The notes: generated by a model not told the origin, from the sequence alone. A stretch of DNA of 64,000 bases from IMGVR_UViG_3300017991_000048:62001-126000; one strand, 5' to 3'; shown: positions 1,089 through 57,553, numbered from the stretch's first letter. A program made the numbers and translations.

Positions 1089-1667
1089 ATGCCGTCAAAA
1101 AAGACCAAAGTAATAGTTCAAAAGACAGGTTCGACAAGCATTGGCTTTGGCAGCGCCCTGACCCTTATACTCATCACACTCAAGCTGACGGGCCACATTG
1201 ACTGGTCTTGGATTTGGGTTCTGTTTCCGTTTTGGCTCCCTGTAGCAGCCATGATCGGTCTGGCGTTAGGGGCCATTCTGATGGTTGCCCTGTTCGGTAC
1301 TGGCTTCATGGTGGTTGAGTTCTTCACAGAGCGACATGCCAAGAAAAAGCAAGACTCGCATGAACGATTGCATAGACAATTGCATGAGCAAAGACTAGAA
1401 ACCGAGAGGACGGCTCGACAACGGCACCAACGTTCACACGAGCGAAGGCTAGAGTACCCTTTACTCCGTGAAAGGGTACGAGGATTGAGAGCGGCACATG
1501 ATCTAGCCTTGTCTTTTTCTGGCGTTGAAGCTGATCTTGAAGCTGAGGAACAAAGGCTTGAGGCTGAGATACAAGAGCTTGAATCTCGTCTACAGGAAAA
1601 GAGTGACCCGCCAGAGGACAAACCGACAGAACCCGAACAGACTTTATGGGATCACCTGAAGGATTAA
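1089..1667 (+). CDS. Membrane + coiled-coil protein with LWDHL tail
   Basis: N-terminal GFGSALTLILITLKLTGHIDWSWIWVL phage membrane motif, heptad-rich C-half, ends QTLWDHLKD. Confidence 0.7.
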   Translation: MPSKKTKVIVQKTGSTSIGFGSALTLILITLKLTGHIDWSWIWVLFPFWLPVAAMIGLALGAILMVALFGTGFMVVEFFTERHAKKKQDSHERLHRQLHEQRLETERTARQRHQRSHERRLEYPLLRERVRGLRAAHDLALSFSGVEADLEAEEQRLEAEIQELESRLQEKSDPPEDKPTEPEQTLWDHLKD

Positions 1668-1906: not shown

Positions 1907-2228
1907 CATGGAAAAAGTTAGACCCCTCGCAGAGATGTCCAGCCTTGAAGAGCAAATCTGGGCAGCAGCGTACATACAACAATTGACCAATCCGCCAATC
2001 CCAGACGGTCCGTGGCACAAACCTATACCATGCCAGAACATTGTGTATCACGATCATAGACCCACGGAGTACAAGGTAGAGGATGCTATTCAGACCGCCA
2101 ACTCTACCGTAGAGGACTTTCGTTCGGTTCAAAACCCCGTCTGTCGGGATTGCAGCAAAGACCTTGACGAAGATAATTCCATGAACGGTTACTGTCTCCG
2201 ATGCCATGAGAAGATTCAAAACCTATAA
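1899..2228 (+). CDS. Hypothetical protein (IWAxA family) with C-terminal zinc ribbon
   Basis: EEQIWAAAY..IQTANSTVEDFR resembles the repeats in 20417-20875; CRDC..CLRC. Confidence 0.55.
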   Translation: MANMEKVRPLAEMSSLEEQIWAAAYIQQLTNPPIPDGPWHKPIPCQNIVYHDHRPTEYKVEDAIQTANSTVEDFRSVQNPVCRDCSKDLDEDNSMNGYCLRCHEKIQNL

Positions 2229-2355
2229 CCCCTTGGAGGTTAAACAATGGAACTCACATATCTTGACCTGTTCCTGGAGGACGTTGGAAACAGACACAGA
2301 AAGTTGTATAGACTCTTCACAGAAGATGACACGGATGAAAACGACTCAGAAGAGA

Positions 2356-2658
2356 ATGAAATACTTCTACAAAAAAGTCCCTGACTTTAGGGAAGTGGCG
2401 ATTTCAAGGTATGCACAACGGCAAGCCGCAAAGGAAAGCGTCACCGATGATGAGGTTTATAATGCTTTGTGGCACGGGAAAAAGAGCCGCGTAAAAGGTG
2501 ACAAAAAGGCCGTTCACATTCGAGAGTATGGCGATGTTCGTCTTGAGGTCGTTGATCTAAGACAGACCAAAACTAGGGTCCATTATTCAGGGTACTTATA
2601 CATTGTTTCAACCATCCGACGAACCCGGACTTACAACCTTTGGGACCATTTAAGATGA
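2356..2658 (+). CDS. Hypothetical protein with LWDHL tail
   Basis: Ends YNLWDHLR; ATG at 2356 after AGAAGAG. Confidence 0.6.
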   Translation: MKYFYKKVPDFREVAISRYAQRQAAKESVTDDEVYNALWHGKKSRVKGDKKAVHIREYGDVRLEVVDLRQTKTRVHYSGYLYIVSTIRRTRTYNLWDHLR

Positions 2659-3236
2659 CTGTTGTCCGAGATACAGATGACCCAAACACTTTCTTGTGCC
2701 AGGATTGCGGTAATAACTTCTGTTATACGGACGGCAAAAAGCTGGTCAAGCATTTAGATGTCACCCCTTTGTGCCCTTTCTGCCACTCATCAGGAGAGAT
2801 AATGTCCGCCCCTAACACCTTTAATACCAACTATAACGGTACGGACACCACTGCTACGATCAATACTAATTCTGGTCTGACCATGCGCGAACGGCTAATC
2901 AAGCTTGAGTCCCAGTTTGAGCGGTATCGGGCGATTACCGCACGGGCATGTAATGTTCTTCGCGGGATTCGTGGGACAAGTGCGATAGATAAAGAAAAAG
3001 AGTTGCCCTCTGGCATGGTCGGACAACTATCGCATGAGTTATCTTTACTTCAGAGTGTTGAGTGGCGACCTACAAAGAGCTTCGCCACTTATGTAATCAC
3101 ACAATATTACAAAAGAGCCGCTGATTTTCAGGACGGTCTCAAGATCAAAAAAGATGTTGATGCTGTTTGGGAAGAGGCTCAAGAGTATTGGCCCGATCCC
3201 GGCCCTGGCCTTTGGGACACATTGCAGGAAAAATGA
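2655..3236 (+). CDS. Paralog family A member 1 (Zn ribbon + coiled coil + LxxExxxLxxxxWxP domain)
   Basis: LSHELSLLQSVEWRP..DAVW..GLWDTL. Confidence 0.7.
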   Translation: MTVVRDTDDPNTFLCQDCGNNFCYTDGKKLVKHLDVTPLCPFCHSSGEIMSAPNTFNTNYNGTDTTATINTNSGLTMRERLIKLESQFERYRAITARACNVLRGIRGTSAIDKEKELPSGMVGQLSHELSLLQSVEWRPTKSFATYVITQYYKRAADFQDGLKIKKDVDAVWEEAQEYWPDPGPGLWDTLQEK

Positions 3237-3535
3237 TGAAAAAAGTAAAAGCGCCCAAAACAACGATGCTGCTTGGCTCCCGTCGCAAAGTTATACCGCT
3301 AGGGAAAAACGGCGTATACAATATTTTGTTGCGAGTAGGGCAGGAAGTGAAGTTCACGGTCCTCATTGTAGAACATTACAATGTCTATAGGGCTTGGGTT
3401 CACGAGTTGGAAAATGGATTCACCATGCGTCAAGCGTATGATTTTCGAGGTGTGATCGAACTGGTCGAAAAGGGGCTCATTGAACATCTAACCGAGACAG
3501 CCACCGTTTGCGGGTACAAGTTGAAAAAGTTATAA
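3233..3535 (+). CDS. Hypothetical protein
   Basis: ATGA overlap with upstream stop. Confidence 0.5.
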   Translation: MMKKVKAPKTTMLLGSRRKVIPLGKNGVYNILLRVGQEVKFTVLIVEHYNVYRAWVHELENGFTMRQAYDFRGVIELVEKGLIEHLTETATVCGYKLKKL

Positions 3536-3537
3536 CT

Positions 3538-4140
3538 ATGTCTGTCACTCGTGTTTGGCATTTTGAAAATGCTTACCGTTGCGGTTCTTGCGGGGTCACC
3601 TTCGTGTATCAAGGGACAGCGGTGACACCTTCTTGCCCCAGTTGTACTGTGGTGGAGACTTCTGACGGTTATCACATAACAGAGAACGGATACTACATAC
3701 AAGAGAGCGATGATATCTCCAAAGAACGACTCATGGATCAGGTACTTGAGTTGGACAAGGAAGTGAAGAGCTTACATGAGGGGATATCAAGGTGGGCTGA
3801 GATCGCCAGAGAAGTAGCTCTTAAATTGCAAGAGTTACGAACAGAGTTGCCTTTGGGTGCCTCGTTAGAAGGGCACGAGGCCGACCGTAACACTTGGGCC
3901 GATGGGCATAAAGATTTCAATGCTTTGCAGTTTGAACATAGACTACTTCAGGAAGGCCGGTGGCAGAGCCCTCTTTTGGTACGCACCCTCATGCTCAAAG
4001 CTTACGGCAAAGCCGAGAGTTATGAAGAGGCTTGCGACATCAAGAAATATTTTGATAAAGCGTGGTCTGTTATTGAACAACGATGGGCTGAGAAAAAAGG
4101 GACAAACCTTTGGGATCACATCTCAGACGGGGATGAATGA
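3538..4140 (+). CDS. Paralog family A member 2
   Basis: CGSC..CPSC; LQFEHRLLQEGRWQS..DKAW..NLWDHI. Confidence 0.7.
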   Translation: MSVTRVWHFENAYRCGSCGVTFVYQGTAVTPSCPSCTVVETSDGYHITENGYYIQESDDISKERLMDQVLELDKEVKSLHEGISRWAEIAREVALKLQELRTELPLGASLEGHEADRNTWADGHKDFNALQFEHRLLQEGRWQSPLLVRTLMLKAYGKAESYEEACDIKKYFDKAWSVIEQRWAEKKGTNLWDHISDGDE

Positions 4141-4451
4141 TGCCCATAGAACGTGAATACTCACAAAGTGGAGTTCTTCTGTTTGTTTGTACAGACTGTC
4201 GGTTATCGTGGCCTGTGGAAGACAGCCCTGACCGTGACCCAGTTTGCCCTTATTGCTCCCCGGACGGCCCTTCCAAAATAACCAATGTGTTTTGCAGCAA
4301 CTGTGGTAAGAGAATTCGAGTCGGATGGTCCAAAAGTCTAAACTTTTGTGGTAAGAAGTGTCGTGATGCTCATTATCAGTCCATCAAAACTCCAATCGAA
4401 CGGGACCGGACCCTTTGGGACCATGTGAAGGGCGGTGAAGATGAGTGGTGA
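4137..4451 (+). CDS. Double zinc-finger protein with LWDHV tail
   Basis: CTDC..CPYC; CSNC..FCGKKC; RTLWDHVKG. Confidence 0.7.
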   Translation: MMPIEREYSQSGVLLFVCTDCRLSWPVEDSPDRDPVCPYCSPDGPSKITNVFCSNCGKRIRVGWSKSLNFCGKKCRDAHYQSIKTPIERDRTLWDHVKGGEDEW

Positions 4452-4905
4452 TCTTAGAAAATGTATTGAGTGCAACAAAGAGTTTGTTCCCACTATGCTC
4501 TCTTGTCCGATCTGCCAGTGTCAGAAAGAGGACAATATCGCCAAACGGCTTATGGAGCTTGAACTTACTGTGAAAGCCTTTCAGAAAACAGAGTGGGAGT
4601 TGAGGGGGTTGGTCAAAGAAGCGGCTGAAGAGATGCGGAGAAGGCGCGAAAGAAATCCTTCATACGCTATTACTTCACTTCCTTGGGCCGATGCTCTCCG
4701 TCTGGAACTGAAGTTTTTGAAAGAGAGTGAATGGGAACCTAATTTTGAACTTGTCCAGGCTCTTGTTTTGAAGTTTTACCAGAACGCTGAGGATTCTGCA
4801 CACGCCTATAGTCGTAAGAAGCGGCTAGATGAGCTTTGGGCTCAGGCTCAAAGTGAAAAGGTCAAAGGGCTGCCTACTTTATGGGATCACGTATCGAGGG
4901 AGTAG
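4441..4905 (+). CDS. Paralog family A member 3
   Basis: LRLELKFLKESEWEP..DELW..TLWDHV. Confidence 0.7.
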   Translation: MSGDLRKCIECNKEFVPTMLSCPICQCQKEDNIAKRLMELELTVKAFQKTEWELRGLVKEAAEEMRRRRERNPSYAITSLPWADALRLELKFLKESEWEPNFELVQALVLKFYQNAEDSAHAYSRKKRLDELWAQAQSEKVKGLPTLWDHVSRE

Positions 4906-5005
4906 TCTGGTGCCAGACACAGCCCCATATGACATCATTTTCATTTCCGTACTTTGGTTTGTCATAATGTCTGGCGCTATCTTCCAGTACCTGAAGGGTA
5001 AAACC

Positions 5006-5230
5006 ATGGCAAAGTATAAGCATGTAAGAGTCAAGACCTATGAATGTAAGCTGAGAACCGATAAACAGTGGACCCCTATTGAGTCCATTGATCCAGCGGG
5101 TGCGGCTGAAACCTTTGTCGAAGAGCACGTTGCCCCGCCAGCCCGTGTGTTTGTGGCTGTGCGTGGTGTAGGGTTGTTTAGTGTTAGGCCGGTTGTTGAG
5201 TATGAAGCGGAGCAAGTAAATGACCAGTGA
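5006..5230 (+). CDS. Hypothetical protein
   Basis: ATG at 5006 after GAAGGG. Confidence 0.45.
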   Translation: MAKYKHVRVKTYECKLRTDKQWTPIESIDPAGAAETFVEEHVAPPARVFVAVRGVGLFSVRPVVEYEAEQVNDQ

Positions 5231-5687
5231 GATAGACAAGCTAAATGCGGAGCTAGAAACCCGGAAACATATCCATCAAGTCAGAAAACTACTGCAAGAG
5301 ATGGTAGTTATGCTTCTGAAGCGAGGTGAAAACCATGACGCGACAAAGCTTGAGGCACCAGAAGCGGAAGGCTTTGCGGAGTACACCCCCAAGCTCGCAA
5401 CGTCAACCTACGGAAGCGACGAGTACAACCAATTTCTGAAAGACATGCAGCCGTTCCTTAAGTTCCATTATATGAAAAACTCGCACCATCCGGAGTTCTA
5501 CGAAAATGGCGTAGATGACATGAATTTGATAGATCTGATCGAGATGCTCTGTGACTGGAAAGCGGCAACACTGAGACACAATGACGGAGATATTCATAAG
5601 AGCATTGAACACAATGCCGATCGGTTCGGGTTGAGTCCTCAGATCGTTCATATATTCAGAAATACCGCCAAGAGCCTGGGATGGTAG
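5220..5687 (+). CDS. DUF5662-like phage protein (HD-like)
   Basis: HIHQV..HDATKL..TYGSDEY..HYMKNSHHPE..DLIEMLCDW pattern. Confidence 0.7.
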   Translation: MTSEIDKLNAELETRKHIHQVRKLLQEMVVMLLKRGENHDATKLEAPEAEGFAEYTPKLATSTYGSDEYNQFLKDMQPFLKFHYMKNSHHPEFYENGVDDMNLIDLIEMLCDWKAATLRHNDGDIHKSIEHNADRFGLSPQIVHIFRNTAKSLGW

Positions 5688-5947
5688 CTCAATACTCTTG
5701 TGACCATTGCAACCGGCCTATAAAGGGCACTGTTTACGTTGCATACGAAAATACTCTTCTTCGTTGGTGCAAACCAAGGTGTCGAGCCATCACACTTCGT
5801 CAGGCGGAGATTTGCGCCGATTGTTATAACTCAACCTGTGGGGGTCCAGAAACCTGTGTATCTCACCCTAAAAGAAATCTCTGGGACTATCTCAAAGGGC
5901 CAGACATAATGTATCAAGATTGGTACTCCTCTTTAAGAATTGATTAA
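5681..5947 (+). CDS. Zinc-finger protein with LWDYL motif
   Basis: CDHC..WCKPRC..CADC; RNLWDYLK. Confidence 0.6.
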   Translation: MVAQYSCDHCNRPIKGTVYVAYENTLLRWCKPRCRAITLRQAEICADCYNSTCGGPETCVSHPKRNLWDYLKGPDIMYQDWYSSLRID

Positions 5948-5974
5948 GACCCAAAACCGGTGTAGTATTCCGGT

Positions 5975-6460
5975 ATGTTAGTTTGCCCAGTTTGCAAAGC
6001 GGAATACCACGGTGGCAAGCCCGATGAAGCCGAAATGTTCATGCGTGGGCACAGGCATTGTGGAGAGGAGGCACGGGCGGAGGCCAAGAGAGAGATCCGG
6101 GAACAGCAGAGATTACTGGACGATCTTAATCGAGAATGCCGTCAAATGCGTAGCGGTTGTGAAGCGGTTATCGGGGAGCTACAGATGCTCCGTTTGGGGA
6201 AGCTTGATTCCTCTAGTTGGGAAGGCAAGAAACTGTTCGATGCTTTAGACTATGAGATACACTACCTGAAGTCTGGAAAGTGGCGACCCAACGGTGAGTT
6301 GCTCACGGAGATGGTGCGCCGGTACTTTATGGGGATAGCTTTTGAGGACGCTTTTGAGTTTCATAAAGCTCTTGCTGGTCTATGGGACGAACGTGTCCAG
6401 AGTGTAGAAGATAAAAACTCTACCTTATGGGAACATCTGAATCGAGACGGAGATGCCTAA
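5975..6460 (+). CDS. Paralog family A member 4
   Basis: LDYEIHYLKSGKWRP..GLW..STLWEHL; CGGTGTAGTAT-N6-ATG upstream. Confidence 0.7.
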   Translation: MLVCPVCKAEYHGGKPDEAEMFMRGHRHCGEEARAEAKREIREQQRLLDDLNRECRQMRSGCEAVIGELQMLRLGKLDSSSWEGKKLFDALDYEIHYLKSGKWRPNGELLTEMVRRYFMGIAFEDAFEFHKALAGLWDERVQSVEDKNSTLWEHLNRDGDA

Positions 6461-6728
6461 TTTCATATTCCGAGTGCCTGAAGACGGCTTCTTAGATGTC
6501 AAAACGTTTTTTAATGAAATCGAGGCGTCTCCAATTTCTGCGGCGATACATAAAGTCTCAGTCTACGAAGGAACTTGCACCTGTGCTTTTGGCAGACGTC
6601 TGAACAAAGCAGACACCAAAATAATGCAAGACTTAGTAACTGGGCACCAAGGTTTTGTTGAGACACCAAAGTATCCGATCGATGAAAGTAAAACCAAGGA
6701 TCTTTGGGAGCATCTGAAAAATGAGTAA
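6453..6728 (+). CDS. Hypothetical protein with LWEHL tail
   Basis: Ends [10 protein letters not shown]. Confidence 0.65.
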   Translation: MPNFIFRVPEDGFLDVKTFFNEIEASPISAAIHKVSVYEGTCTCAFGRRLNKADTKIMQDLVTGHQGFVETPKYPIDESKTKDLWEHLKNE

Positions 6729-7194
6729 AGCAAAAAACGTCCGAAGCCTTCAAAAGGTTATCGATAAACAAAATAAGGCTATCACAGAACTTGAGGACAA
6801 GATCGCAAGTCTTGAAATGCACCGTGACGCACGGTTTGCAAAGTTCGAAGATGAGAACCGGAAGCTCCATATTGTCGGCAGAGCATTGATTACCGCAATG
6901 AAAAGAATGAGGAAGGTAAGGCATGACGAGCCAAGTCTTAACTCTCCCTTAGAAGAGGAACTGAGCTACGAGTTAGAATGCTTGAGAGAAGGGCGTTGGT
7001 TGCCTGATTTCAAAAGGCTCATGGATTATCTTGAGGCGCATTATATAGAAGCCGAAGGCTTTGGGGAAGCTGTGTCTTTGCACCAAAGCCTTGAGGACTT
7101 GTGGGAGAAGATCCAGCAGCAATGGTGGGGCGGTGAAATCGAGGGGCTAACTACCCTTTGGGAATATTTAACAGACGAGAATGAAAATGACTGA
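6721..7194 (+). CDS. Paralog family A member 5
   Basis: [26 protein letters not shown]. Confidence 0.7.
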
Positions 7195-7744
7195 AGAAAT
7201 TTACGTAAGCGTAGACGTGGAATCTGACGGCCCTATACCGGGACCTAACTCTATGTTGAGTATTGGGGCGGCAGCGTACCTGGACGGGACACTGGTCGAT
7301 ACTTTTGAAGCCAACCTGAAGACTTTACCGGGTGCCCAACCAAACGCCGGTACTATGGAATGGTGGAAAACACAGCCTGAAGCCTGGAAGATTTGTAGAG
7401 AAAACCCCCAACCGCCTGAAAAAGCCATGAACGAGTTTTCAGATTGGCTTCACGCATTGCCAGGGAAGCCGGTATGTGTTTGCTATCCCGCTGGTTATGA
7501 CTTTACATTTGTGTACTGGTATCTGATCAACTTTACGGGTGCCAGTCCGTTTGGTTTTCAAGCGCTCGACATAAAGACGTATGCCATGGCTGTACTTGGA
7601 AAGCCTTTCCGTAAAGTCTCCAAGAAAACCATGCCCAAGAAATGGTTTGAAGGTTTGCCCAAACACACCCACCGGGCGGTAGATGATGCGATTGAGCAAG
7701 GCGCGTTGTTCTGTCGAATAATGGAAGATACAGGTAAGCAATGA
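7187..7744 (+). CDS. DEDDh 3'-5' exonuclease (Rv2179c-like exoribonuclease)
   Basis: SVDVESDGP (ExoI), YDF (ExoII), HRAVDDA (ExoIII). Confidence 0.85.
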
Positions 7745-7968
7745 CGAAAAAGATCCAGGTCACGTTCGACGATCATGCGGTAGAGATACTTGAGACGCTC
7801 AAAAAGGCTTCAGGTGCAGCATCAAATGCTCAAGTGTTGCGTGAGGCGATAGGCTTTTACGATTGGGCGCGTGAAGAGATTGTTGAAAAAGGGCGTAAGG
7901 TAGGCGCTATGAAAAAGGGCGACGTTGTTTCAGAAGTGCATCTCAAGTTTCATAAGAAGAGGCGATAA
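7741..7968 (+). CDS. Ribbon-helix-helix (CopG-like) DNA-binding protein
   Basis: KKIQVTF strand, then helix-turn-helix [10 protein letters not shown]. Confidence 0.65.
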
Positions 7969-7972
7969 GAGG

Positions 7973-8308
7973 ATGTACCAGTGTGCTGTATGCAAACGTC
8001 AGGTTAATGGTGTTATCCCCTGGTCACAACCAACTGTTGATACCGTTATCTGTTCCCGTGCGTGTCACAACAGAAGCTTGAACCTGTGTGCTCGTTGCGA
8101 TCAACCTATGCCTGACCCGCCTTATAGACGTTGGAACTATCACCAGAGGTACTGCTCTATCGAGTGCAGGGCTGAGGGCACGAATTGGGCCTCGTGTACC
8201 GAGTGTAATAATGACCTTTGCGCCCCACCTTGTGACTACTTTTTTACTAATAGCAAGCCGCTGTGGGCTTATCTACGGGACAGTGATGACCCCTTGCCAG
8301 CATTGTAG
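7973..8308 (+). CDS. Triple zinc-finger (TRASH/FCS-like) protein with LWAYL tail
   Basis: CAVC..ICSRAC; CARC..YCSIEC; KPLWAYLRD. Confidence 0.65.
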   Translation: MYQCAVCKRQVNGVIPWSQPTVDTVICSRACHNRSLNLCARCDQPMPDPPYRRWNYHQRYCSIECRAEGTNWASCTECNNDLCAPPCDYFFTNSKPLWAYLRDSDDPLPAL

Positions 8309-8588
8309 CGCGGACCAACCGGATGCAACCCCTGTGATTAGGGAAGGGGATTTACGGTTCTGTACTCATTATTGTCATAGAAAATGGATGGAAGAATACC
8401 ACCGGCTCATTGCTAGAAAGGCCGTATACAACCCGTTGCCGGTACTTCAAGGTTGTAAATGCTTTTGTGGTGGGCCACTTCGACCAATTACAAAAGCTTG
8501 CCGCCACGAAGATCCCGATCAGTATTACTGTCTTACTTGCGGTTCGATACACGACCATAAAACCTTTTGGGACCACATTCAGGAGTAA
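8286..8588 (+). CDS. Zinc-finger protein with FWDHI tail
   Basis: ATG at 8286; CQHC..FCTHYC; CFC..CLTC; KTFWDHIQE. Confidence 0.65.
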   Translation: MTPCQHCSADQPDATPVIREGDLRFCTHYCHRKWMEEYHRLIARKAVYNPLPVLQGCKCFCGGPLRPITKACRHEDPDQYYCLTCGSIHDHKTFWDHIQE

Positions 8589-8591
8589 GTT

Positions 8592-8843
8592 ATGTTCAAA
8601 AACGGAGCGTACTATCTTATAACTGGACTGATCATTGGTACTTTCATTGTCTGCGGGTTCGGTGCCTATCAGGACGGGGCTGTTGATGGCCACTTCCGGT
8701 GTACGTTAGAGGATGGATCTTCGATTCGTGGTGATTTCCGCACGGCTGAAAGAACCTCAGAAGGCTGGCACATTGTGACCAAAACCGGGGCAGAGATGGA
8801 TTTGCAAGAGGTTGATTGCACAGTTGTAAGGTACGCACCGTAG
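8592..8843 (+). CDS. Putative exported or membrane-anchored small protein
   Basis: N-terminal hydrophobic stretch followed by a beta-rich domain. Confidence 0.5.
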   Translation: MFKNGAYYLITGLIIGTFIVCGFGAYQDGAVDGHFRCTLEDGSSIRGDFRTAERTSEGWHIVTKTGAEMDLQEVDCTVVRYAP

Positions 8844-8851
8844 GAGTAATC

Positions 8852-9328
8852 ATGGCACCCTGGACCCCTTCGACTCCCACTGCACCCCTAAGCAACGCCT
8901 GGACCGTAACCACTACTGCCAGCACTGATTACGCCACCGGGAGCGATGCTACGGCTATTATTACCACCTATTCACATCCTATCCCGACTCAATCTGATAA
9001 AGAGGTAGAGCTTGAGCGTAAGCTTAACAGGCATCGTGAGGCTTGCCATGACGCTATTGAGTTACTTCGTTGTGTTCGTCAGACGACAAGGGGAATCCGA
9101 CCGGACAATACGCCAGAGGCGTTGCAAGATGAAGTGAAACTCTTTCAAGACGGCGATTGGCAACCTACGGCACGGTTTGTAGCCACCGTTTTGCTCAAAT
9201 ATTACCTGAGTGGCGGGACTCTCAAGAAGGCTATCAAGCGGAGAGAACTGGCAGATGCCGTTTGGAATCAGGTTCTTGAGCAATTGGCTCCGGACGCCAC
9301 TCTTTGGGAATCTTTACGGGATGAATAA
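8852..9328 (+). CDS. Paralog family A member 6
   Basis: LQDEVKLFQDGDWQP..DAVW..ATLWESL; AGGAG RBS. Confidence 0.7.
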   Translation: MAPWTPSTPTAPLSNAWTVTTTASTDYATGSDATAIITTYSHPIPTQSDKEVELERKLNRHREACHDAIELLRCVRQTTRGIRPDNTPEALQDEVKLFQDGDWQPTARFVATVLLKYYLSGGTLKKAIKRRELADAVWNQVLEQLAPDATLWESLRDE

Positions 9329-9352
9329 CTTTTGATAAGCGGGTTAGGTATT

Positions 9353-9568
9353 ATGTCAGACGACCACACACGATGGAAAGAAGCAGTCGCAGGCATGGAC
9401 GTGGCAGAACTTACAGCCCTGCATAAAAAGGCTCTGAACGCCTACAATATGGCGAACTCTGCCAGGGATGCTGCATCAGGAGCGTCTAAGCAAGCGACAG
9501 CAGCCGCCGATGAGCTTCGAGATCTCGTCCAATTTTTCTATGAAGCGATCCGGGATGCCAGACGGTAA
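9353..9568 (+). CDS. Ala-rich helical hypothetical protein
   Basis: ATG at 9353, clean ORF. Confidence 0.5.
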   Translation: MSDDHTRWKEAVAGMDVAELTALHKKALNAYNMANSARDAASGASKQATAAADELRDLVQFFYEAIRDARR

Positions 9569-9798
9569 GCGAGCTTCCTAGCCTTTCCCCTAACCCTTTC
9601 GGCCCATTCAGCGTTGGCAACCTTGTCACCGGGAGTGGCTTCCCAACGGTCGGCACAGGCGAACAGGTACTTTACGTGCTCTTGAGGTGTTCTTCGGACA
9701 TTATCAGGGCCTAAGTATTTTTCGATCATGGCTAACTCCTTTCGGGTTAGAACAATGCAACCCCCGTGCCAATAGCCGTGATCAGTAATTTCAAGCAC
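9538..9798 (-). CDS. Hypothetical protein
   Basis: ORF track; converges on 9353-9568. Confidence 0.4.
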   Translation of the reverse strand: MLEITDHGYWHGGCIVLTRKELAMIEKYLGPDNVRRTPQEHVKYLFACADRWEATPGDKVANAEWAERVRGKARKLAYRLASRIAS

Positions 9799-9827
9799 TT
9801 AGATACGTTTCGACAGCGCGGTGCCGA

Positions 9828-9857
9828 CGCTACCGGTTGAAATTTCAATCGCTACCG
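9828..9857. promoter_or_regulatory. Operator-like palindrome flanked by direct repeats
   Basis: CGCTACCG-G-TTGAAATTTCAA-T-CGCTACCG in a divergent intergenic region. Confidence 0.45.
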
Positions 9858-9941
9858 ATTTTATGTGGGCATGTTGATGGAAAAACGGTGTAATAGTGAT
9901 ATTATCGACTTGACCGTTTTTCCGAGCGCGACTCTTGCTTG

Positions 9942-10093
9942 ATCACTGTCAGCAGACGGTCGCACCAAAACTTACCCCAGATAGCCGACGTCTGTAGCCA
10001 AAAAGCTGTAATTTTGTTGCACATACCTAAGGTTTCGTATGGCAAAAAAAGTCAAAAAAGTCAAATCACTGTCAGCAGACGGTCGCACCAAAA
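9942..10093 (+). repeat. 29-bp perfect direct repeat (9942-9970 and 10065-10093)
   Basis: ATCACTGTCAGCAGACGGTCGCACCAAAA occurs twice, once intergenic and once in the 5' end of CDS 10039. Confidence 0.9.
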
Positions 10094-10548
10094 AGAAGGT
10101 GATAAGAACCATTGAGGATGAGATCAGATATCTTGTCGATAAAGACGTTCACATTTACATCGATGATAGGAAAACCAAAGATTTGCAGGAACAATTGAAG
10201 CACGAACGTCAGCAAGTGCTTGTGCTGGAAACTTCTATTTTGGAGTACAAGAGAGTTTGCGCTGAAGCGGCTGTGGAGTTTAGAAGCTATCGCCGGGGTG
10301 CAAAAAATAGAGAGTTCTCAGATGAATTAGCAGAGCTACAATATGAGTTGGGTGCATTGAAAAAACCCAACTGGCGTCCCACCGTGTTGTTTGCCAAGTT
10401 TGTGGTTTCAAAATACTTCAAGACGGCAAAGAGTCTGGGAGAAGCTTCTAAGCTTAGGAAAAAGCTCGATGAAGTGTGGGACAAAGCTCAGGAAGAGTGG
10501 ACCACTTTCGGTCCACATACGCTTTGGGAAGCGGTAAGAGATAACTGA
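10039..10548 (+). CDS. Paralog family A member 7
   Basis: LQYELGALKKPNWRP..DEVW..HTLWEAV. Confidence 0.7.
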   Translation: MAKKVKKVKSLSADGRTKKKVIRTIEDEIRYLVDKDVHIYIDDRKTKDLQEQLKHERQQVLVLETSILEYKRVCAEAAVEFRSYRRGAKNREFSDELAELQYELGALKKPNWRPTVLFAKFVVSKYFKTAKSLGEASKLRKKLDEVWDKAQEEWTTFGPHTLWEAVRDN

Positions 10549-11159
10549 TGTCTAAGCGACTCCTTCAAGTAATAAACTTTGTTCCGATGGTGATATGGGC
10601 ATTGGCGGCTGTGGCTGCTTACGTCATCAACTTCGAGGACAAGACGGTTTGGTCAACTGGCCTTTTTACTCTATGTGCTGTCACACTAAGCATTCTTTAT
10701 ACTATTAAAACGGAAAGCCCCTCAAAGCAGGAGCCTGAGGGCCGTTGTAATGAGTGTCACCGGGAAATCCGTTTAAGTGACCCGGCCACCCGATCGTTTG
10801 TTACATGCGCGTCTCCGCATGGCACTCCCTACGGCAGCGAGACTATCTACCTATGCCGCCGTCATTGTCGTACTCAATATCTTGCCAAACTTTTACAGGT
10901 TGCGGATTCCATAACCGAACCTAGAGATGATTTAGATTATTTACGACAACGGACGCCGCCGCATCCGGTATTACCTCCGATACCTCCTCCCCTTACCCGG
11001 CCAGGACGGGTAATGAACGATCTTTACGGTGAGAACTATCTAGAGCACATGGAAGAATTGGAGCGGCAATACGGCGACTTGAAGCATATGGAAGGCGAGC
11101 CTCAAGAAGGTGAACCCGAAGGGCCTGAAAAGGATCTCTGGGATTACGTCAAAGGATAG
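10548..11159 (+). CDS. Membrane protein + zinc finger with LWDYV tail
   Basis: Two TM segments, CNEC..LCRRHC, Pro-rich linker, ends KDLWDYVKG. Confidence 0.65.
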   Translation: MSKRLLQVINFVPMVIWALAAVAAYVINFEDKTVWSTGLFTLCAVTLSILYTIKTESPSKQEPEGRCNECHREIRLSDPATRSFVTCASPHGTPYGSETIYLCRRHCRTQYLAKLLQVADSITEPRDDLDYLRQRTPPHPVLPPIPPPLTRPGRVMNDLYGENYLEHMEELERQYGDLKHMEGEPQEGEPEGPEKDLWDYVKG

Positions 11160-11162
11160 AAA

Positions 11163-11570
11163 ATGGAATATGAAACATCAGATAAAGCGTTTAATGCAAC
11201 CAAAGACCTTCTGGACCTGATGGTGGCAGCGGGTATCCCCCGGCAAGTGGCAGTGGATACCGTCGAAAAGGCCAGTAAGAATCTGGTCCGCATAGGTATA
11301 GAGATCAATCAGTCGGTGGTACAGGACATGGTTGCGGTTTGCAGAGAAGCTGTAAGTACTGCTTTTACGCCTGAAGGTGTTGCACCTTGGCTGGCACCTC
11401 TCAAAGAGCCGTTTCTGAAGGCTGTTGGTCCTGGTGTTGTTGAGGCTCTTGACAAGTATGCCGGTGAGCAAGGGTCTGAAAAGCTCAGCAAAGCGTGGGG
11501 AGAGCTTGGGGAAGCCTTTGTTGCTCAACTTGGGATCATCATTGACACCGGGATGGAAGAGAGAAGTTAA
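11163..11570 (+). CDS. Hypothetical helical protein
   Basis: Clean ORF in operon. Confidence 0.55.
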   Translation: MEYETSDKAFNATKDLLDLMVAAGIPRQVAVDTVEKASKNLVRIGIEINQSVVQDMVAVCREAVSTAFTPEGVAPWLAPLKEPFLKAVGPGVVEALDKYAGEQGSEKLSKAWGELGEAFVAQLGIIIDTGMEERS

Positions 11571-11572
11571 AA

Positions 11573-11860
11573 ATGGAGCACAACTTTTGGCTAGTAGTGG
11601 CTTGCGCTCTGGGTTGGGCTTTGGTCTTTTTCGAATGGTGGCTGAACAAAGAGTGGCAGCGGGACATGCTTAAAAAGAGCGACTCCCTCTTTAAGGAAAT
11701 GGATAAGCTGCACCAGATGTATGTGGATCGTGACGCAGACATAAAGCAGATGACCCAAGAAATTCACGAGGCATTGAGTACCGAAGATCTACCGACTTGT
11801 AATCCGGGTACTTTCCACCCATGCTCAGATCCTCAGCCTGTGGGCATGTCTTTTCCGTAA
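11573..11860 (+). CDS. Membrane-anchored coiled-coil protein; C-terminus read from thaumatin antisense
   Basis: N-terminal TM; last ~27 codons overlap the minus-strand thaumatin domain. Confidence 0.5.
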   Translation: MEHNFWLVVACALGWALVFFEWWLNKEWQRDMLKKSDSLFKEMDKLHQMYVDRDADIKQMTQEIHEALSTEDLPTCNPGTFHPCSDPQPVGMSFP

Positions 11861-12353
11861 GACCGGTACAATCGGCTATTTTACAGTTTCCCTGGCCCAC
11901 GTCCGTTGCTAACGGGATTATCTTGAATTGTGGTTCGGAGTACCCATTGACCAGACTGAGGTCAACCCAGACCCGACCTGTGTCTCTGGCATCAAACGTA
12001 AGCTCGAACTCTGGCATACTGTTCGGCTGGCAGCCGGGGCTTATCGGATTGGAGCACGGATTCCAGGCTTGACCCCACGTGCAATTTTGCCCGGTCTTGT
12101 CACACCCGACTTTGGGCCAGATTGAGATACTTGGAAAGCTTCCGTCGCCAACCTTAAATTCAACTGACGTGCCCTTTGGTATGGAAGTGTCTGCATCATG
12201 TCCAGGCAGATTTAACTGGTGCGTCCAAAGGTCTTCAGAGCAATTGTTTGTGATTTTGATATACCGTTCGGCTACTGACTCAGCTTCAGCTTCTATTTCA
12301 GCGTCACAACCGAGACAGAGACAGGTTATTAGTAATGATAGTAGTAGTTTCAT
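11691..12353 (-). CDS. Thaumatin-like (PR-5/osmotin family) lipoprotein, apparently C-terminally truncated
   Basis: Lipobox LGC; ITNNCSEDLW, IWPKVGC, NCTWG, EFELT, VDLSLVNGY, thaumatin Cys spacing; resemblance stops after VDLR (~11780). Confidence 0.75.
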   Translation of the reverse strand: MKLLLSLLITCLCLGCDAEIEAEAESVAERYIKITNNCSEDLWTHQLNLPGHDADTSIPKGTSVEFKVGDGSFPSISIWPKVGCDKTGQNCTWGQAWNPCSNPISPGCQPNSMPEFELTFDARDTGRVWVDLSLVNGYSEPQFKIIPLATDVGQGNCKIADCTGLTEKTCPQAEDLSMGGKYPDYKSVDLRYSMPREFLGSSALCLRHDPHTSGAAYPFP

Positions 12354-12392
12354 CCTTGGCTCCATACCAAGGCGGGTATTATCAAAGATCTC

Positions 12393-12623
12393 TCAATCTT
12401 CAGGGTAGTACCCAACAATTTCCAGTAGCTGAAAAGCCAACTCAGGAAGTGCGTTGTTCACGTTGTCCTGTTGCAGGAGACTTTCAGCACAGCTTGGCCG
12501 GTGCTCATTTCGCCATTCTTCTATAATTTTGTGGAGTTTTCGCAATTCTTGAAGCTCTTTGGTTCTTTGTTCTAGTAGCTGTCGAGTGCCGATTAGTTCT
12601 TTGTGCATGGCTGATTCAAACAT
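12393..12623 (-). CDS. Coiled-coil hypothetical protein
   Basis: ATG at 12623 overlaps upstream stop. Confidence 0.45.
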   Translation of the reverse strand: MFESAMHKELIGTRQLLEQRTKELQELRKLHKIIEEWRNEHRPSCAESLLQQDNVNNALPELAFQLLEIVGYYPED

Positions 12624-13227
12624 TTGGATCTCCTGGTTCTCCTGCTGGTCCTGTCGAACAATATGGCGATCCAACTGGACCTGTCGGTGGCCCAGTTGGG
12701 CCTGTAGCTCCGATGCAGGCCGATATTGTGATCCCGGCTTCACGGCAAATATCTAGGATTTGCCTTTGTTCTGGCGTCTCATATACGAATGCAGAACCGT
12801 CTCCTCTTATAACCCTTTCGTCTGCTAGAAGCGAGATTCTACGAAACATATCTTGAAATCGATCGTGGTCTTGTTGGCGTTGCATTGCCAAACGCCACAT
12901 TTTTGCAGGTATTCTGTATTGGAACCCCTCTTCGTGTGGGTCACTGCTACTGACACATTGGATGTCGTAAAGTGGGTATTCAACCCCGTGTTCCGCGACG
13001 ACAATGTAAGTTGCTTCGTCGATTTCAAGAGCTTGATTCATGGGATCGGGATCGTGTGGCTCTTGCACATGCTCCCATAGGGTCTTATTAGGCCCGACCT
13101 CTCTGGCTTCGATATCGACTGGTTTAACACACTGAGGGCAGAATCGCCTGCTTATGGAATCGTCCATTCCGGTGCCGCCGCATGTCTCACATTTAGGGTC
13201 TGTTGTCAGGACTCGCATTCTGGTCAT
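12616..13227 (-). CDS. Zn-finger + internal LWEHV + GATGP-rich tail protein
   Basis: CETCGGTG..CPQC; KTLWEHVQ at residue ~50; GATGPTGP..GEPGDP. Confidence 0.6.
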   Translation of the reverse strand: MTRMRVLTTDPKCETCGGTGMDDSISRRFCPQCVKPVDIEAREVGPNKTLWEHVQEPHDPDPMNQALEIDEATYIVVAEHGVEYPLYDIQCVSSSDPHEEGFQYRIPAKMWRLAMQRQQDHDRFQDMFRRISLLADERVIRGDGSAFVYETPEQRQILDICREAGITISACIGATGPTGPPTGPVGSPYCSTGPAGEPGDPNV

Positions 13228-13481: not shown

Positions 13482-13500
13482 CGGTGTAATATACTACACC
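13482..13500. promoter_or_regulatory. Overlapping divergent GGTGTA[AG]TAT motifs
   Basis: CGGTGTAATAT on + (13482-13492) and GGTGTAGTAT on - (13500-13491) between divergent genes. Confidence 0.6.
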
Positions 13501-25947: not shown

Positions 25948-26334
25948 ATGATGAATCGTAGGCAATTTCTCAGAACAATAATCCCGGTAGCTGGAGCGGT
26001 TGCCGTCGCTCCTTCCATCCTGATCCCAGAAAAGAAGTTCTGGGACATGGGAGCGGCGTGGGCCAAAACTCTGCAACCAGGGGATGTAGGGTACGAGCTT
26101 GCAAATGGGGCAATAGACATAATATATAATGCGGCCTCCCATCTGTGGGAGGTGAGTTGGGTAGAAAAGGGCGGTTACCCAATGCGGCGATTTGATACCG
26201 ATGGGAAAGAAATACAGGTTGCTGACGTGACTTTGACTTTGCCTTCACGCCCTTCACACGGCGACAAAATTACCGCTGTCTATAAAAGAGACTTGACTCA
26301 CAACAGAGTTTCAATCCATCAAGAGAACACCTGA
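25948..26334 (+). CDS. Protein with twin-arginine (Tat) signal peptide
   Basis: MMNRRQFLRTIIPVAGAVAVAP. Confidence 0.6.
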   Translation: MMNRRQFLRTIIPVAGAVAVAPSILIPEKKFWDMGAAWAKTLQPGDVGYELANGAIDIIYNAASHLWEVSWVEKGGYPMRRFDTDGKEIQVADVTLTLPSRPSHGDKITAVYKRDLTHNRVSIHQENT

Positions 26335-41688: not shown

Positions 41689-42054
41689 ATGGGCGAACTT
41701 ATTAAGATTGAAGACTGGCAAAGACCCATTCGGATAGGGGTAGCGGAGCCGGGAAAGTTCACCGTTCAAGGCGAACCTGTTGTTATCGCCCCCAAAATCG
41801 TGAGCCTCAGGTGTCTTGAGTGTGGAAAGACATTGGCGTCCATAGATGCGAAAATGGACTTTACGGACTTACCACCAAACCTACATGCCCTTTTCGTCAA
41901 CATGCTCATGCAAACGGGGGAACATAGTGACTGCCCAAAGACACTCAAAAAACCGAAATTGGTTCATTCATCAAAAGAGAAACCAACAAAATGGGCAAAG
42001 TTTATAGGCTGGTTACGTAGGCTAGTTGCTCTACGAAGATCCGTGGTGAGATAA
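41689..42054 (+). CDS. Zinc-binding hypothetical protein
   Basis: CLEC..HSDC. Confidence 0.5.
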   Translation: MGELIKIEDWQRPIRIGVAEPGKFTVQGEPVVIAPKIVSLRCLECGKTLASIDAKMDFTDLPPNLHALFVNMLMQTGEHSDCPKTLKKPKLVHSSKEKPTKWAKFIGWLRRLVALRRSVVR

Positions 42055-57497: not shown

Positions 57498-57553
57498 GAG
57501 GGCCTATCTATATTCTACACCGAATTTATCGAAATGTGAAATTTCCTATAAGT

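What the first reader, a model, noticed from the sequence alone, without database searches (positions are those of the whole stretch)
2655..10548. Seven-member paralog family with a new LxxExxxLxxxxWxP helical domain, all LW-tagged
Seen: 2655, 3538, 4441, 5975, 6721, 8852 and 10039 share exact spacing L-x2-E-x3-[LF]-x4-W-x-P (Ser replaces Pro in 3538). After it come a Tyr, an A..F.EA-type helix, D-x-[VL]-W about 35 residues later, and then the LW tag. Each has a different N-terminus (zinc ribbons, Thr-rich or basic segment) joined by a coiled coil. They are interleaved with other genes rather than tandem, and are highly diverged. Inference: variable N-terminus plus constant C-terminal domain plus tag is the architecture of a diversified adaptor or effector repertoire.
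Basis: partly seen in the sequence, partly recalled or inferred. Interest (0 to 1): 0.65.

Follow-up and report, generated by a model that had tools for sequence, protein, structure and literature searches.

The report
LW-tagged dimeric jumbo-phage paralog family
An uncultured 398-kb jumbo phage carries about twenty fast-diverged copies of a previously unseen small protein (variable head, coiled-coil dimer module, short C-terminal 'LWDHL' peptide), and it shares that peptide with some 35 unrelated proteins, which suggests an undescribed protein-addressing system whose receptor is unknown.

Summary
The seven ORFs are homologous: leave-one-out HMMs without the tag give E 1e-9 to 1e-19. But seven is an undercount. 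The genome is a complete 398-kb tailed jumbo phage, and it holds 21 matches (about 20 loci, two of them split by frameshifts), all on the + strand at genome 50.1-72.5 kb.

The conserved unit is about 120 aa: the end of a heptad helix with an invariant Arg, then the L-x2-E-x3-L-x4-W-x-P helix, two more helices (Y, D-x2-W), and a Gly/Pro linker. It matches nothing in Pfam, PHROGs, NCBIfam, PDB sequences, Foldseek (PDB, BFVD), VIA-align or the ESM Atlas. Among 1.84 billion representative proteins, only two foreign metagenomic fragments match.

A homodimer model passes its controls (0.78 vs 0.01): a parallel coiled coil with the motif residues in the interface and the tag left free.

The LW tag is a separate, portable peptide selected at protein level. 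About 51-55 ORFs carry it, as do about 45-60 ORFs in a sister phage that lacks this family, and two older orthologous proteins.

Best reading: bivalent dimeric adaptors or scaffolds in the fast-turnover accessory arm. Function and receptor are not established. A phage-encoded ClpX is an untested candidate receptor.

The parts
2655..3236 (+). Family member A, 193 aa. N-terminal CxxC...CxxC zinc ribbon, a Thr/Asn-rich linker, the conserved module at 2880-3230, and the tag LWDTL at 3210-3224.
   Evidence: Its nearest foreign relative is P0019 (37% identity).
3538..4140 (+). Family member B, 200 aa. Zinc ribbon, the module at 3727-4128 (Ser in place of the motif Pro, and a longer loop), and the tag LWDHI at 4108-4122.
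   Evidence: The ribbon is homologous to the N-terminus of genome ORF 50059-50454.
4441..4905 (+). Family member C, 154 aa. Zinc ribbon, the module at 4534-4899, and the tag LWDHV at 4879-4893.
5975..6460 (+). Family member D, 161 aa. A Cys/His-containing N-terminus, the module at 6080-6445, and the tag LWEHL at 6425-6439.
6721..7194 (+). Family member E, 157 aa. A basic N-terminus that runs straight into the coiled coil, the module at 6817-7179, and the tag LWEYL at 7156-7170.
8852..9328 (+). Family member F, 158 aa. A Thr-rich N-terminus, the module at 8966-9325, and the tag LWESL at 9302-9316.
10039..10548 (+). Family member G, 169 aa. A Lys-rich N-terminus, a heptad coiled coil, the module at 10177-10545, and the tag LWEAV at 10522-10536. 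This is the sequence used for the monomer and homodimer models.
2206..2658 (+). Interleaved LW-tagged ORF that is not a family member (150 aa, tag LWDHL).
4137..4451 (+). Interleaved LW-tagged zinc-ribbon ORF that is not a family member (104 aa, tag LWDHV).
5681..5947 (+). Interleaved LW-tagged Cys-rich ORF that is not a family member (88 aa, tag LWDYL).
6453..6728 (+). Interleaved LW-tagged ORF that is not a family member (91 aa, tag LWEHL).
7925..8308 (+). Interleaved LW-tagged Cys-rich ORF that is not a family member (127 aa, tag LWAYL).
8211..8588 (+). Interleaved LW-tagged Cys-rich ORF that is not a family member (125 aa counted from the ATG, tag FWDHI).
10548..11159 (+). LW-tagged ORF with hydrophobic N-terminal segments that look membrane-spanning (203 aa, tag LWDYV). 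Not a family member.
   Evidence: The membrane reading comes from the sequence only.
5959..5972 (+). Promoter-like motif CGGTGTAGTA, 16 nt before the ATG of member D. It belongs to a genome-wide class in which the ATG lies 15-17 nt after GGTGTA.
9887..9900 (+). The same promoter-like motif (CGGTGTAATA), 152 nt before the ATG of member G.

Best explanation
The seven ORFs are part of a lineage-specific family of about 20 loci of small modular proteins. The family lies in the fast-turnover accessory arm of a complete 398-kb tailed jumbo phage.

Each protein has three parts:
- An exchangeable N-terminal head: a zinc ribbon, a small alpha/beta domain, or a basic or Thr-rich segment.
- A conserved module of about 120 aa. 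This is a parallel coiled coil capped by a three-helix bundle, and it makes the protein a symmetric homodimer. The L-x2-E-x3-L-x4-W-x-P, Y and D-x2-W residues form its core and interface.
- A Gly/Pro linker followed by the LW tag, [KR]-[TDNS]-L-W-[DE]-[HY]-[LVI], with usually 1-10 more residues after it.

The tag is a separate, portable docking peptide. It is an N-capped amphipathic turn of helix, used by about 55 proteins of this phage.

The dimer would therefore present two heads and two tags. It would act as a bivalent adaptor or scaffold that couples whatever the heads bind to the common, still unidentified tag receptor.

Basis of each claim:
- Shown: homology, copy number, modularity, protein-level selection on the tag, and absence of known relatives.
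- Predicted by models: the fold and the homodimer.
- Inferred: the adaptor role, the docking role of the tag, and an early or accessory (host-interaction) function.
For: Homology and family size:
- Leave-one-out HMMs without the tag give E 1e-9 to 1e-19.
- The profile finds 21 matches at genome 50.1-72.5 kb.

Phage identity:
- Terminase large subunit, baseplate J, family-A DNA polymerase, direct terminal repeats and 100% estimated completeness.

Fold:
- The AF2 model has pLDDT 87.5, with a 38-residue helix, three further helices and a short tag helix of lower confidence.
- Hydrophobic residues follow a 3-4 spacing at positions 5, 9, 16, 19, 23, 26, 30, 33 and 37 of the modelled sequence (read directly from the sequence).

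Dimer:
- Score 0.78 against a best control of 0.01.
- That mark was reached by 20 of 30 proteins solved as pairs of one chain and by 1 of 23 proteins solved as single chains.
- The runs agree in at least 83% of contacts, and the partner pLDDT is at least 81.
- In-register contacts (12-12, 16-16, 19-19, 26-26, 33-33) indicate a parallel arrangement.
- The motif residues are in the interface. Residues 111-125, which hold the tag, are not.

Tag independence:
- 51 strict tags lie in the last 25 aa of ORFs against 6 elsewhere, about a 25-fold higher density.
- The DNA pattern occurs 44 times against 0 for the reversed control.
- Synonymous sites vary freely: GAT 23 / GAC 19, CAT 27 / CAC 20, and all six Leu codons are used.
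- 34 tagged ORFs are singletons unrelated to the family.
- The sister phage G002 has 45 exact DNA-pattern matches and 70 ORFs with the loose motif in the tail (16 in an internal control), but no copy of the domain.
- A tagged protein at window 42054-42491 keeps the tag in orthologues down to 36% identity, while its linker varies in length.

Head shuffling:
- The same alpha/beta head sits on members from different module clades, and on a stand-alone tagged ORF.

Fast turnover:
- G001 (TerL 80%) and G002 (TerL 83%) lack the family.
- The median terminal branch in the family tree is 1.19 substitutions per site, and neighbouring genes pair up as expected from tandem duplication.
Against: - No experiment or expression data could be obtained.
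- The dimer is a model built on a 17-row alignment of paralogs. The tool's calibration holds only roughly for such input.
- Long helices are easily laid side by side by predictors.
- The receptor is unknown. The tag could equally be a degron, a packaging signal or a localisation signal, in which case 'adaptor' is the wrong word.
- Nothing shows that the heads bind anything.
- Heterodimers among paralogs were not tested.
- Two loci are split by frameshifts, so some copies may be decaying.
Confidence: 0.45

Rival explanations
1. ClpX system. The LW tag is the recognition or tethering peptide for the phage's own ClpX unfoldase, which would work with the host ClpP. Either all tagged proteins are substrates cleared by it, or the dimeric family members are SspB-like bivalent adaptors that deliver bound host proteins to it.
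For: - The phage encodes a full-length ClpX: 417 aa, with zf-C4_ClpX, AAA_2 and ClpB_D2-small domains, a GYVG pore loop, and MGF at the position of the ClpP-docking IGF loop. It encodes no ClpP.
- ClpX is conserved in G001-G005.
- ClpX is absent from the two more distant phages, which also have no tags.
- A distant phage contig holds a tagged orthologue of the window 42054-42491 protein, and a 183-aa zf-C4_ClpX protein lies 4 kb away.
- The family's layout (homodimer, flexible linker, conserved C-terminal peptide) mirrors SspB. In SspB, the C-terminal XB peptide binds the ClpX N-domain and bivalent tethering is needed. This is established knowledge (Wah 2003; Bolon 2004; Park 2007) and was not re-read here.
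- ClpX and several tagged genes carry the same promoter-like motif.
Against: - Binding was not tested.
- The tag does not resemble known ClpX signals (ssrA LAA, MuA, the XB motif LRVVK).
- G003 and G005 have ClpX but no convincing tags, G004 has one plausible tagged ORF, and G001 has only a few. Co-occurrence is therefore clade-wide and not discriminating.
- No member matches the SspB family in Pfam.
- Phage ClpX genes are known in other jumbo phages, and no tag has been reported for them (PMC7824862, PMC6102473).
Confidence: 0.18
2. Nucleic-acid-binding regulators. A basic arm or zinc ribbon placed directly N-terminal to a parallel coiled coil grips DNA or RNA as a dimer, in the manner of bZIP proteins. 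The tag would recruit, or be recruited by, the transcription or replication machinery.
For: - Members E and G have Lys/Arg-rich segments that run straight into the heptad helix, and several others carry zinc ribbons.
- The dimer is predicted to be parallel.
- The older tagged protein at window 42054-42491 gives weak winged-helix-like fold matches (MarR, Z-alpha, PadR; E 0.1-0.7, model pLDDT 67).
- bHLH dimers appear among the weak structural matches to the module (Z 4-5).
Against: - All the structural matches lie in the noise range for helical proteins.
- Some heads are Thr-rich or alpha/beta domains with no basic character.
- Tags also sit on membrane proteins (window 1089-1667 and 10548-11159).
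- No repeated operator-like DNA sites were found beside the genes.
Confidence: 0.15
3. Virion cargo. The tag is a capsid-loading peptide, analogous to encapsulin cargo-loading peptides or the T4 capsid-targeting sequence. The coiled-coil family would be scaffold-like internal or ejected proteins.
For: - Coiled-coil dimers with a C-terminal shell-binding element are the design of the P22 and phi29 scaffolding proteins (established knowledge).
- Jumbo phages carry paralogous internal head proteins (established knowledge for phiKZ-like phages).
- Three tagged ORFs share an N-terminal segment with tail-fibre or baseplate-like proteins.
- The Atlas structure search lists a phage scaffolding cluster, but at TM 0.33.
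Against: - The family is absent from sister phages with 80-83% identical terminase. Structural proteins would be expected to be conserved.
- The genes lie on the opposite strand and far from the structural block, among small accessory genes.
- Some tagged proteins look like integral membrane proteins.
- No fold match to scaffolding proteins was found.
Confidence: 0.1
4. Decaying duplicates or mis-called ORFs without a shared function. The motif would be a relic of recent duplication.
For: - Two loci are split by frameshifts.
- There are no homologues outside this lineage apart from two fragments.
Against: - Copies are only 15-30% identical yet keep the same invariant residues and open frames.
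- Tag codons vary synonymously, which indicates purifying selection on the peptide.
- Foreign relatives at 27-37% identity keep both the module and the tag.
- The fold is predicted with confidence.
Confidence: 0.03

Closest known systems
SspB-type ClpXP adaptors (bacterial)
   Same: Both are homodimers with a flexible linker and a short conserved C-terminal tethering peptide, two per dimer. A ClpX gene is present in the same genome.
   Different: There is no sequence or fold similarity to the SspB substrate-binding domain. The peptide sequence is unrelated to the XB motif. Dimerisation is by a coiled coil. Binding to ClpX was not tested.
Phage scaffolding proteins (P22 gp8, phi29 gp7)
   Same: Both are elongated helical coiled-coil dimers whose C-terminal element docks on another protein.
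   Different: This family is not in the structural module, is not conserved in sister phages, and exists in about 20 copies with different heads. There is no fold match.
Terminal targeting peptides that address many unrelated cargos (encapsulin cargo-loading peptides, the T4 capsid-targeting sequence, PTS1, the RXLR motif of oomycete effectors)
   Same: One short conserved peptide is shared by dozens of otherwise unrelated, fast-evolving proteins. It is separated from the folded part by a linker.
   Different: The consensus is different. The receptor and destination are unknown. The tag is followed by 1-20 further residues, and once it occurs near an N-terminus. I found no report of such a tag in phages.
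Phage-encoded adaptor-like modulators of host Clp proteases (SPO1 Gp53, PMC6873191) and phage-encoded ClpX/ClpS (PMC7824862)
   Same: These are phage accessory proteins that re-aim AAA+ proteolysis, and jumbo phages that carry their own Clp components.
   Different: Those are single genes with no shared tag and no paralog expansion. Any link between this family and ClpX is only a lead.
Lineage-specific multigene families of jumbo phages and giant viruses
   Same: They show tandem duplication, rapid divergence and location in a variable genome arm.
   Different: Here the copies keep a dimerisation module and an address peptide while swapping heads.

Membership tests
Any curated protein family (Pfam-A, PHROGs v4, NCBIfam) | A profile match at or above the family threshold | tested here: not met
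   All seven window members and ten upstream members were scanned. Only sub-threshold coiled-coil or zinc-ribbon noise appeared.
Any solved or predicted fold | A significant structural match to the module | tested here: not met
   Foldseek against PDB gave a best E of 0.79. Foldseek against BFVD gave a best E of 0.16 over 51 columns. VIA-align wide gave a best Z of 7.0 on helix hairpins, below the noise level stated for helical models. ESM Atlas matches had TM of 0.45 or less. The PDB sequence profile gave a best E of 0.007, to a designed coiled coil.
SspB-type adaptor | Homodimer | tested here: met
   Prediction only: score 0.78 against a best control of 0.01. The mark was reached by 20 of 30 proteins solved as pairs of one chain and by 1 of 23 proteins solved as single chains. 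Contact agreement was at least 83% and partner pLDDT at least 81.
SspB-type adaptor | SspB substrate-binding fold or family (Pfam SspB) | tested here: not met
   No Pfam match and no fold match.
SspB-type adaptor | A C-terminal peptide that binds the ClpX N-terminal zinc domain | not tested
   A conserved C-terminal peptide on a flexible linker exists, and a phage ClpX with that zinc domain exists.
Phage scaffolding protein | Encoded in the head-assembly module and conserved among close relatives | tested here: not met
   The family lies at 50-72 kb on the + strand among accessory genes. TerL is at about 319 kb on the - strand. The family is absent from G001 and G002, whose TerL is 80-83% identical. 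The search method was validated on G000 itself.
Capsid or compartment cargo-loading peptide | The peptide binds the shell protein and the cargo is found inside particles | not testable with these tools
   This needs virion proteomics or binding assays.
bZIP-like dimeric DNA binder | A basic region contiguous with a parallel leucine zipper, plus DNA binding | tested here: inconclusive
   A parallel coiled coil is predicted. Basic N-termini occur only in members E and G. DNA binding cannot be tested here.

The most novel reading that the evidence does not exclude
This jumbo-phage lineage runs its own protein-addressing system. The LWDHL-type peptide would be the docking signal for the N-terminal zinc domain of the phage-encoded ClpX, which would then use the host ClpP. 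The roughly 20 coiled-coil paralogs would be a diversified set of SspB-like bivalent adaptors whose exchangeable heads capture different host proteins, such as defence factors, for unfolding or degradation. The other roughly 35 tagged proteins would be direct clients or competitors.
Probability: 0.15. Interest if true: 0.9.

Novelty: new variant of a known kind. Interest (0 to 1): 0.6.

Why it matters
If the reading holds, this is a compact natural example of modular protein engineering in a virus. One dimerising chassis and one address peptide are kept constant, while target-binding heads are swapped and duplicated about twenty times within 22 kb.

The tag itself marks a regulon-like set of about 55 proteins, roughly a tenth of the phage's genes. 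A sister phage has independently populated the same tag with different proteins.

I am not aware of a described peptide tag shared by that many phage proteins. Finding its receptor would expose a central hub of infection in a clade of soil or sediment jumbo phages. The candidates are the phage ClpX, the capsid, the polymerase or a host protein. The tag would also supply a portable targeting peptide.

The module is also a new, confidently predicted dimerisation fold with no relatives in any library searched.

Tried and rejected
1. Nucleotide-level explanation of the tag. TGGGATCACCT resembles the 3' end of 16S rRNA, so the tag could have been an RNA element rather than a peptide. Rejected: D, H and both L codons vary synonymously, and E/Y/V variants occur.

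2. Known families and folds. Pfam, PHROGs, NCBIfam, the PDB sequence profile, Foldseek PDB and BFVD, VIA-align wide, and the ESM Atlas by structure and by features all gave nothing above noise.

3. Homologues elsewhere.
- The word-index search found only the protein itself.
- The exhaustive profile search of 1.84 billion representatives found only the phage's own copies plus two metagenomic fragments, P0018 and P0019.
- Megablast against the phage collection found no match.

4. Relatives by terminase. 24 IMG/VR loci plus two GenBank phages were searched for the family and for the tag pattern. The family was found in none. The tag expansion was found only in G002 and its fragment G006. Most of these records are fragments, so absence there is weak evidence. 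The method was validated on G000 itself.

5. Finding the receptor by presence or absence. 121 genes are shared with G002 but not with G001. That is too many to narrow down. The oldest tagged proteins are also tagged in G001, so the receptor is probably clade-wide.

6. RiPP precursor idea (a conserved follower peptide plus a Cys-rich core). Rejected: the proteins are 60-230 aa with folded domains and transmembrane segments.

7. Annotation of the older tagged proteins. No Pfam or PHROG match was found. The fold of the window 42054-42491 protein is only weakly winged-helix-like.

8. Sigma-70-type promoter and terminator scan of the region. The counts were no higher than in shuffled sequence.

9. 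Sequencing runs and expression.

10. Complex prediction. Tag-to-ClpX binding, tag-to-capsid binding and heterodimers were not tested.

The two frameshifted family members are only described.

Full report
**1. What the sequence is**

The window is bases 62001-126000 of a single 398,071-bp contig. IMG/VR classes it as a virus record with direct terminal repeats and 100% estimated completeness.

It is a tailed jumbo phage. It encodes a terminase large subunit, a baseplate-J protein, a family-A DNA polymerase, tail-fibre-like proteins, an exonuclease V/Dda-like helicase and methyltransferases. GC content is 48%.

Genes from about 140 kb to the right end are large and almost all on the - strand. 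The stretch at 20-140 kb holds small genes on both strands, three tRNAs, a sulfotransferase and a pol-X-like gene.

The nearest terminases in GenBank are an uncultured 485-kb phage (47% identity) and Tunturiibacter phage Tunturi_5 (28%). IMG/VR holds closer relatives with 63-83% identical terminase.

**2. Check of the observation**

The seven ORFs exist at the stated coordinates. They align with invariant L, E and W of the L-x2-E-x3-[LF]-x4-W-x-P motif, an invariant W in D-x2-W about 35 residues later, and the LW of the tag. Member 3538 has Ser where the others have Pro.

The similarity is not chance. With the tag columns removed, an HMM of any six members finds the seventh at E 1.6e-9 to 3.4e-19 among all 2754 ORFs of the genome.

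The family is larger than reported:
- The profile gives 21 matches, all on the + strand between genome 50.1 and 72.5 kb.
- Ten more intact members lie just upstream of the window, at genome 53141-61815. Seven of these are in direct tandem at 57.8-61.8 kb.
- One divergent member lies at 50535-50939.
- Two members have halves in different frames: 50059-50454 with 50379-50528, and 56805-57419 with 57391-57540. The second pair overlaps beside an A5 run.

The conserved unit is about 120 residues. It begins inside the coiled coil and includes an invariant Arg in an L-[RK]-x-x-R motif at the end of the long helix.

**3. Is it known?**

No. The following searches found nothing:
- Pfam, PHROGs and NCBIfam give only sub-threshold coiled-coil and zinc-ribbon noise.
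- A profile search of PDB sequences gives a best E of 0.007, to a designed coiled coil.
- The word-index search of 5.8 billion proteins finds only the query itself.
- The exhaustive profile search of 1.84 billion cluster representatives finds the phage's own paralogs and two foreign proteins.

The two foreign proteins lie on short metagenomic contigs (1.2 and 2.7 kb). One contig carries two adjacent members, the second with a zinc ribbon. Both foreign proteins end in GLWNAL or GLWNTL. They are only 27-37% identical to the nearest copy here.

**4. Structure**

AlphaFold2 on the 17-row paralog alignment gives pLDDT 87.5. The model has a 38-residue helix, a loop, three helices (52-64, 72-84, 89-113) and a short helix over the tag with lower confidence.

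No library gives a significant fold match:
- Foldseek PDB, best E 0.79.
- BFVD, best E 0.16 over 51 columns.
- VIA-align against 48,161 chains, best Z 7.0 on helix hairpins, within the stated noise for helical models.
- ESM Atlas, TM of 0.45 or less.

The long helix has hydrophobic residues at a 3-4 spacing (read directly from the sequence).

The homodimer prediction supports self-association:
- Score 0.78 against a best control of 0.01.
- That mark was reached by 20 of 30 proteins solved as pairs of one chain, and by 1 of 23 solved as single chains.
- The runs agree in at least 83% of contacts, and the partner pLDDT is at least 81.
- The calibration holds only roughly, because my own alignment was used.

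The contacts are in register (12-12, 16-16, 19-19, 26-26, 33-33), which means a parallel coiled coil. Helix 52-64 of one chain packs on the partner's coil (56 with 29 and 33; 60 with 32, 33 and 36). Helix 72-86 meets its twin (78-78, 79-79).

Residues 111-125, which hold the linker and tag, are not in the interface.

**5. The tag is a separate thing**

Frequency:
- A strict pattern [LF]W[DE][HY][LVI] occurs 51 times in the last 25 residues of ORFs and 6 times elsewhere. That is about 25-fold enrichment per residue. A median of 3 residues (range 1-20) follow the tag.
- The corresponding DNA pattern occurs 44 times, against 0 for its reverse.

Selection acts on the peptide, not the nucleotides. 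Asp is GAT 23 / GAC 19, His is CAT 27 / CAC 20, and the last Leu uses all six codons.

The preceding positions favour Lys and then Thr, Asp, Asn or Ser, which are helix N-cap residues. The following positions favour a basic and then an acidic residue. The tag thus looks like a short N-capped amphipathic helix (L, W, L on one face). This is the usual form of a docking motif. That reading is inference.

Distribution:
- Nearly all tags lie at genome 22-82 kb.
- Only about 20 tagged ORFs belong to the family. 34 are singletons and three small groups are other paralogs.
- Many tagged ORFs are zinc-ribbon proteins. At least two (window 1089-1667 and 10548-11159) have hydrophobic N-terminal segments that look membrane-spanning.

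**6. Comparative evidence**

- G002 (416 kb, TerL 83%) and its fragment G006 carry 45 exact DNA-pattern matches. G002 has 70 ORFs with the loose tail motif (16 in an internal control). They have no copy of the family domain.
- G001 (412 kb, complete, TerL 80%) has no family member and only two C-terminally tagged ORFs.
- Both G001 tagged ORFs have tagged orthologues in G000 and G002. One group is genome 1873-2448 (LWRHL). The other is window 42054-42491 (LWDHL).
- The second protein keeps the tag in orthologues down to 36% identity, while the linker before it changes in length.
- The other 14 terminase-related records have neither tags nor the family, but they are fragments. The two distant GenBank phages also have neither.
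- Only about ten tagged genes of G000 have homologues in G002.

So the tag is old in this clade. It was then spread onto dozens of different small proteins independently in two sister lineages. The coiled-coil family is one such lineage-specific expansion.

**7. Modularity and evolution**

The heads differ among members:
- Zinc ribbons (window 2655, 3538, 4441; genome 57802, 58445, 50059).
- A Cys/His segment (window 5975).
- Basic segments (window 6721, 10039).
- A Thr-rich segment (window 8852).
- A small alpha/beta domain (genome 53141, 59445, 56805).

The alpha/beta head also occurs fused directly to the tag without the module (genome 55039-55326). In the module tree, neighbouring genes pair up (53141 with 54034, 57802 with 58445, 59445 with 60064). 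Terminal branches are very long, with a median of 1.19 changes per column. The two alpha/beta-headed members fall in different clades, although deep support is weak.

This is the pattern expected of tandem duplication, rapid divergence and head exchange.

**8. How it most likely works**

- Shown: this is a real, orphan family of about 20 loci with exchangeable heads, a conserved module and a portable tag under protein-level selection.
- Predicted: the module is a parallel coiled-coil homodimer that leaves two tags free.
- Inferred: the proteins are bivalent adaptors or scaffolds. They would link what the heads bind to the receptor of the tag, within the fast-evolving accessory (probably host-interaction) part of the genome.

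I put 0.45 on this package.

**9. The receptor: a lead, not a finding**

The phage encodes a full-length ClpX:
- It lies at genome 155179-156432 on the - strand and is 417 aa long.
- It has zf-C4_ClpX, AAA_2 and ClpB_D2-small domains, a GYVG pore loop, and MGF at the IGF position.
- The phage encodes no ClpP.

The ClpX gene is conserved in G001-G005 and absent from the two distant, tag-free phages. A distant contig with a tagged orthologue of the window 42054-42491 protein also encodes a 183-aa protein with the ClpX zinc finger.

The family's design (dimer, flexible linker, conserved C-terminal peptide) is that of SspB, whose tail binds the ClpX zinc domain. This is established knowledge.

Against the lead:
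- The tag resembles no known ClpX signal.
- ClpX-bearing relatives exist with few or no tags.
- Nothing was tested.
- Phage ClpX genes have been noted before without any tag (PMC7824862, PMC6102473).

The rival readings are a degron for timed clearance, nucleic-acid-binding dimers with a recruitment peptide, and capsid cargo. They are listed with their evidence in the Rival explanations section.

**10. Limits**

- There are no expression or read data.
- The structure evidence consists of models built on paralog alignments.
- Absence from fragmentary relatives is weak evidence.
- Heterodimers and tag-receptor pairs were not tested.
- The host is unknown.

Noticed in passing
Genome-wide. In the window at 5959-5972 (+), 9887-9900 (+), 13483-13499 and 100-116.: There is a promoter-like motif, (T)TCGGTGTA[AG]TA(T). 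GGTGTA[AG][TG] occurs 100 times, 69 of them intergenic. In 31 cases an ATG lies exactly 15-17 nt after the first G. The -10-like TA[AG]TAT would then sit about 7 nt before the start codon, which suggests leaderless mRNAs. The same spike is seen in sister phages G001 (31 of 94) and G002 (26 of 94). The motif is common at 20-140 kb and 340-384 kb and rare in the 170-340 kb structural block. It precedes clpX and several tagged genes.
   Followed up: partly
G000:C1:155179-156432 (-), which is L006:9182-10432: The phage encodes a full-length ClpX (zinc finger, AAA+ module, GYVG pore loop, MGF at the ClpP-docking loop position) but no ClpP. The ClpX is 73-82% identical in sister phages.
   Followed up: partly
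window 9942-9970 and 10065-10093: An exact 29-nt direct repeat, 123 nt apart. One copy is in the 5' untranslated region of family member G. The other is inside its codons 9-18.
   Followed up: no
G000:C1:56805-57540 and 50059-50528 (L004:6805-7540 and L004:59-528): Two family members are split between two overlapping reading frames. The first split lies beside an A5 run. These could be pseudogenes, assembly indels or frameshift sites. The first ORF of the 56.8-kb pair ends in YWRHLS, which resembles the tag.
   Followed up: partly
window 42054-42491 (+) and G000:C1:1873-2448 (-): These are the two oldest LW-tagged proteins, tagged in all three complete or near-complete phages. The first has an invariant RRTGRS...DH motif and a weakly winged-helix-like model, followed by a disordered linker before the tag.
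   Followed up: partly
L094 (G001:C1:177900-179000, - strand): A tag-like KTLWDHL sits near the N-terminus of an ORF rather than at a C-terminus.
   Followed up: no
window 30477-31092: Three tRNA genes: Ile-GAT, Ile-AAT, and one that ARAGORN reads with a four-base anticodon (tccg). All three pass the Rfam tRNA threshold.
   Followed up: no
G000:C1:22335-22870 (-), 387014-387415 (-) and 10770-11333 (-): Three LW-tagged small ORFs share an N-terminal segment of about 45 aa with larger proteins at about 10.8 kb. The 10770-11333 protein gives a weak PHROG baseplate match, and the neighbouring ORF 11375-12727 gives weak tail-fibre and head-decoration matches.
   Followed up: partly
window 60970-61470 (-): An untagged ORF with a hydrophobic N-terminus and a coiled coil gives a borderline match (E 1e-3) to the first two thirds of the family profile. 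It may be a distant relative or just coiled-coil noise.
   Followed up: no
window 5220-5687, 7181-7744, 26334-27251 and 44681-45652: Annotatable untagged genes lie among the tagged ones: DUF5662 (HD-like), a 3'-5' exonuclease (Rv2179c-like), a sulfotransferase and a family-X (pol beta-like) polymerase.
   Followed up: no
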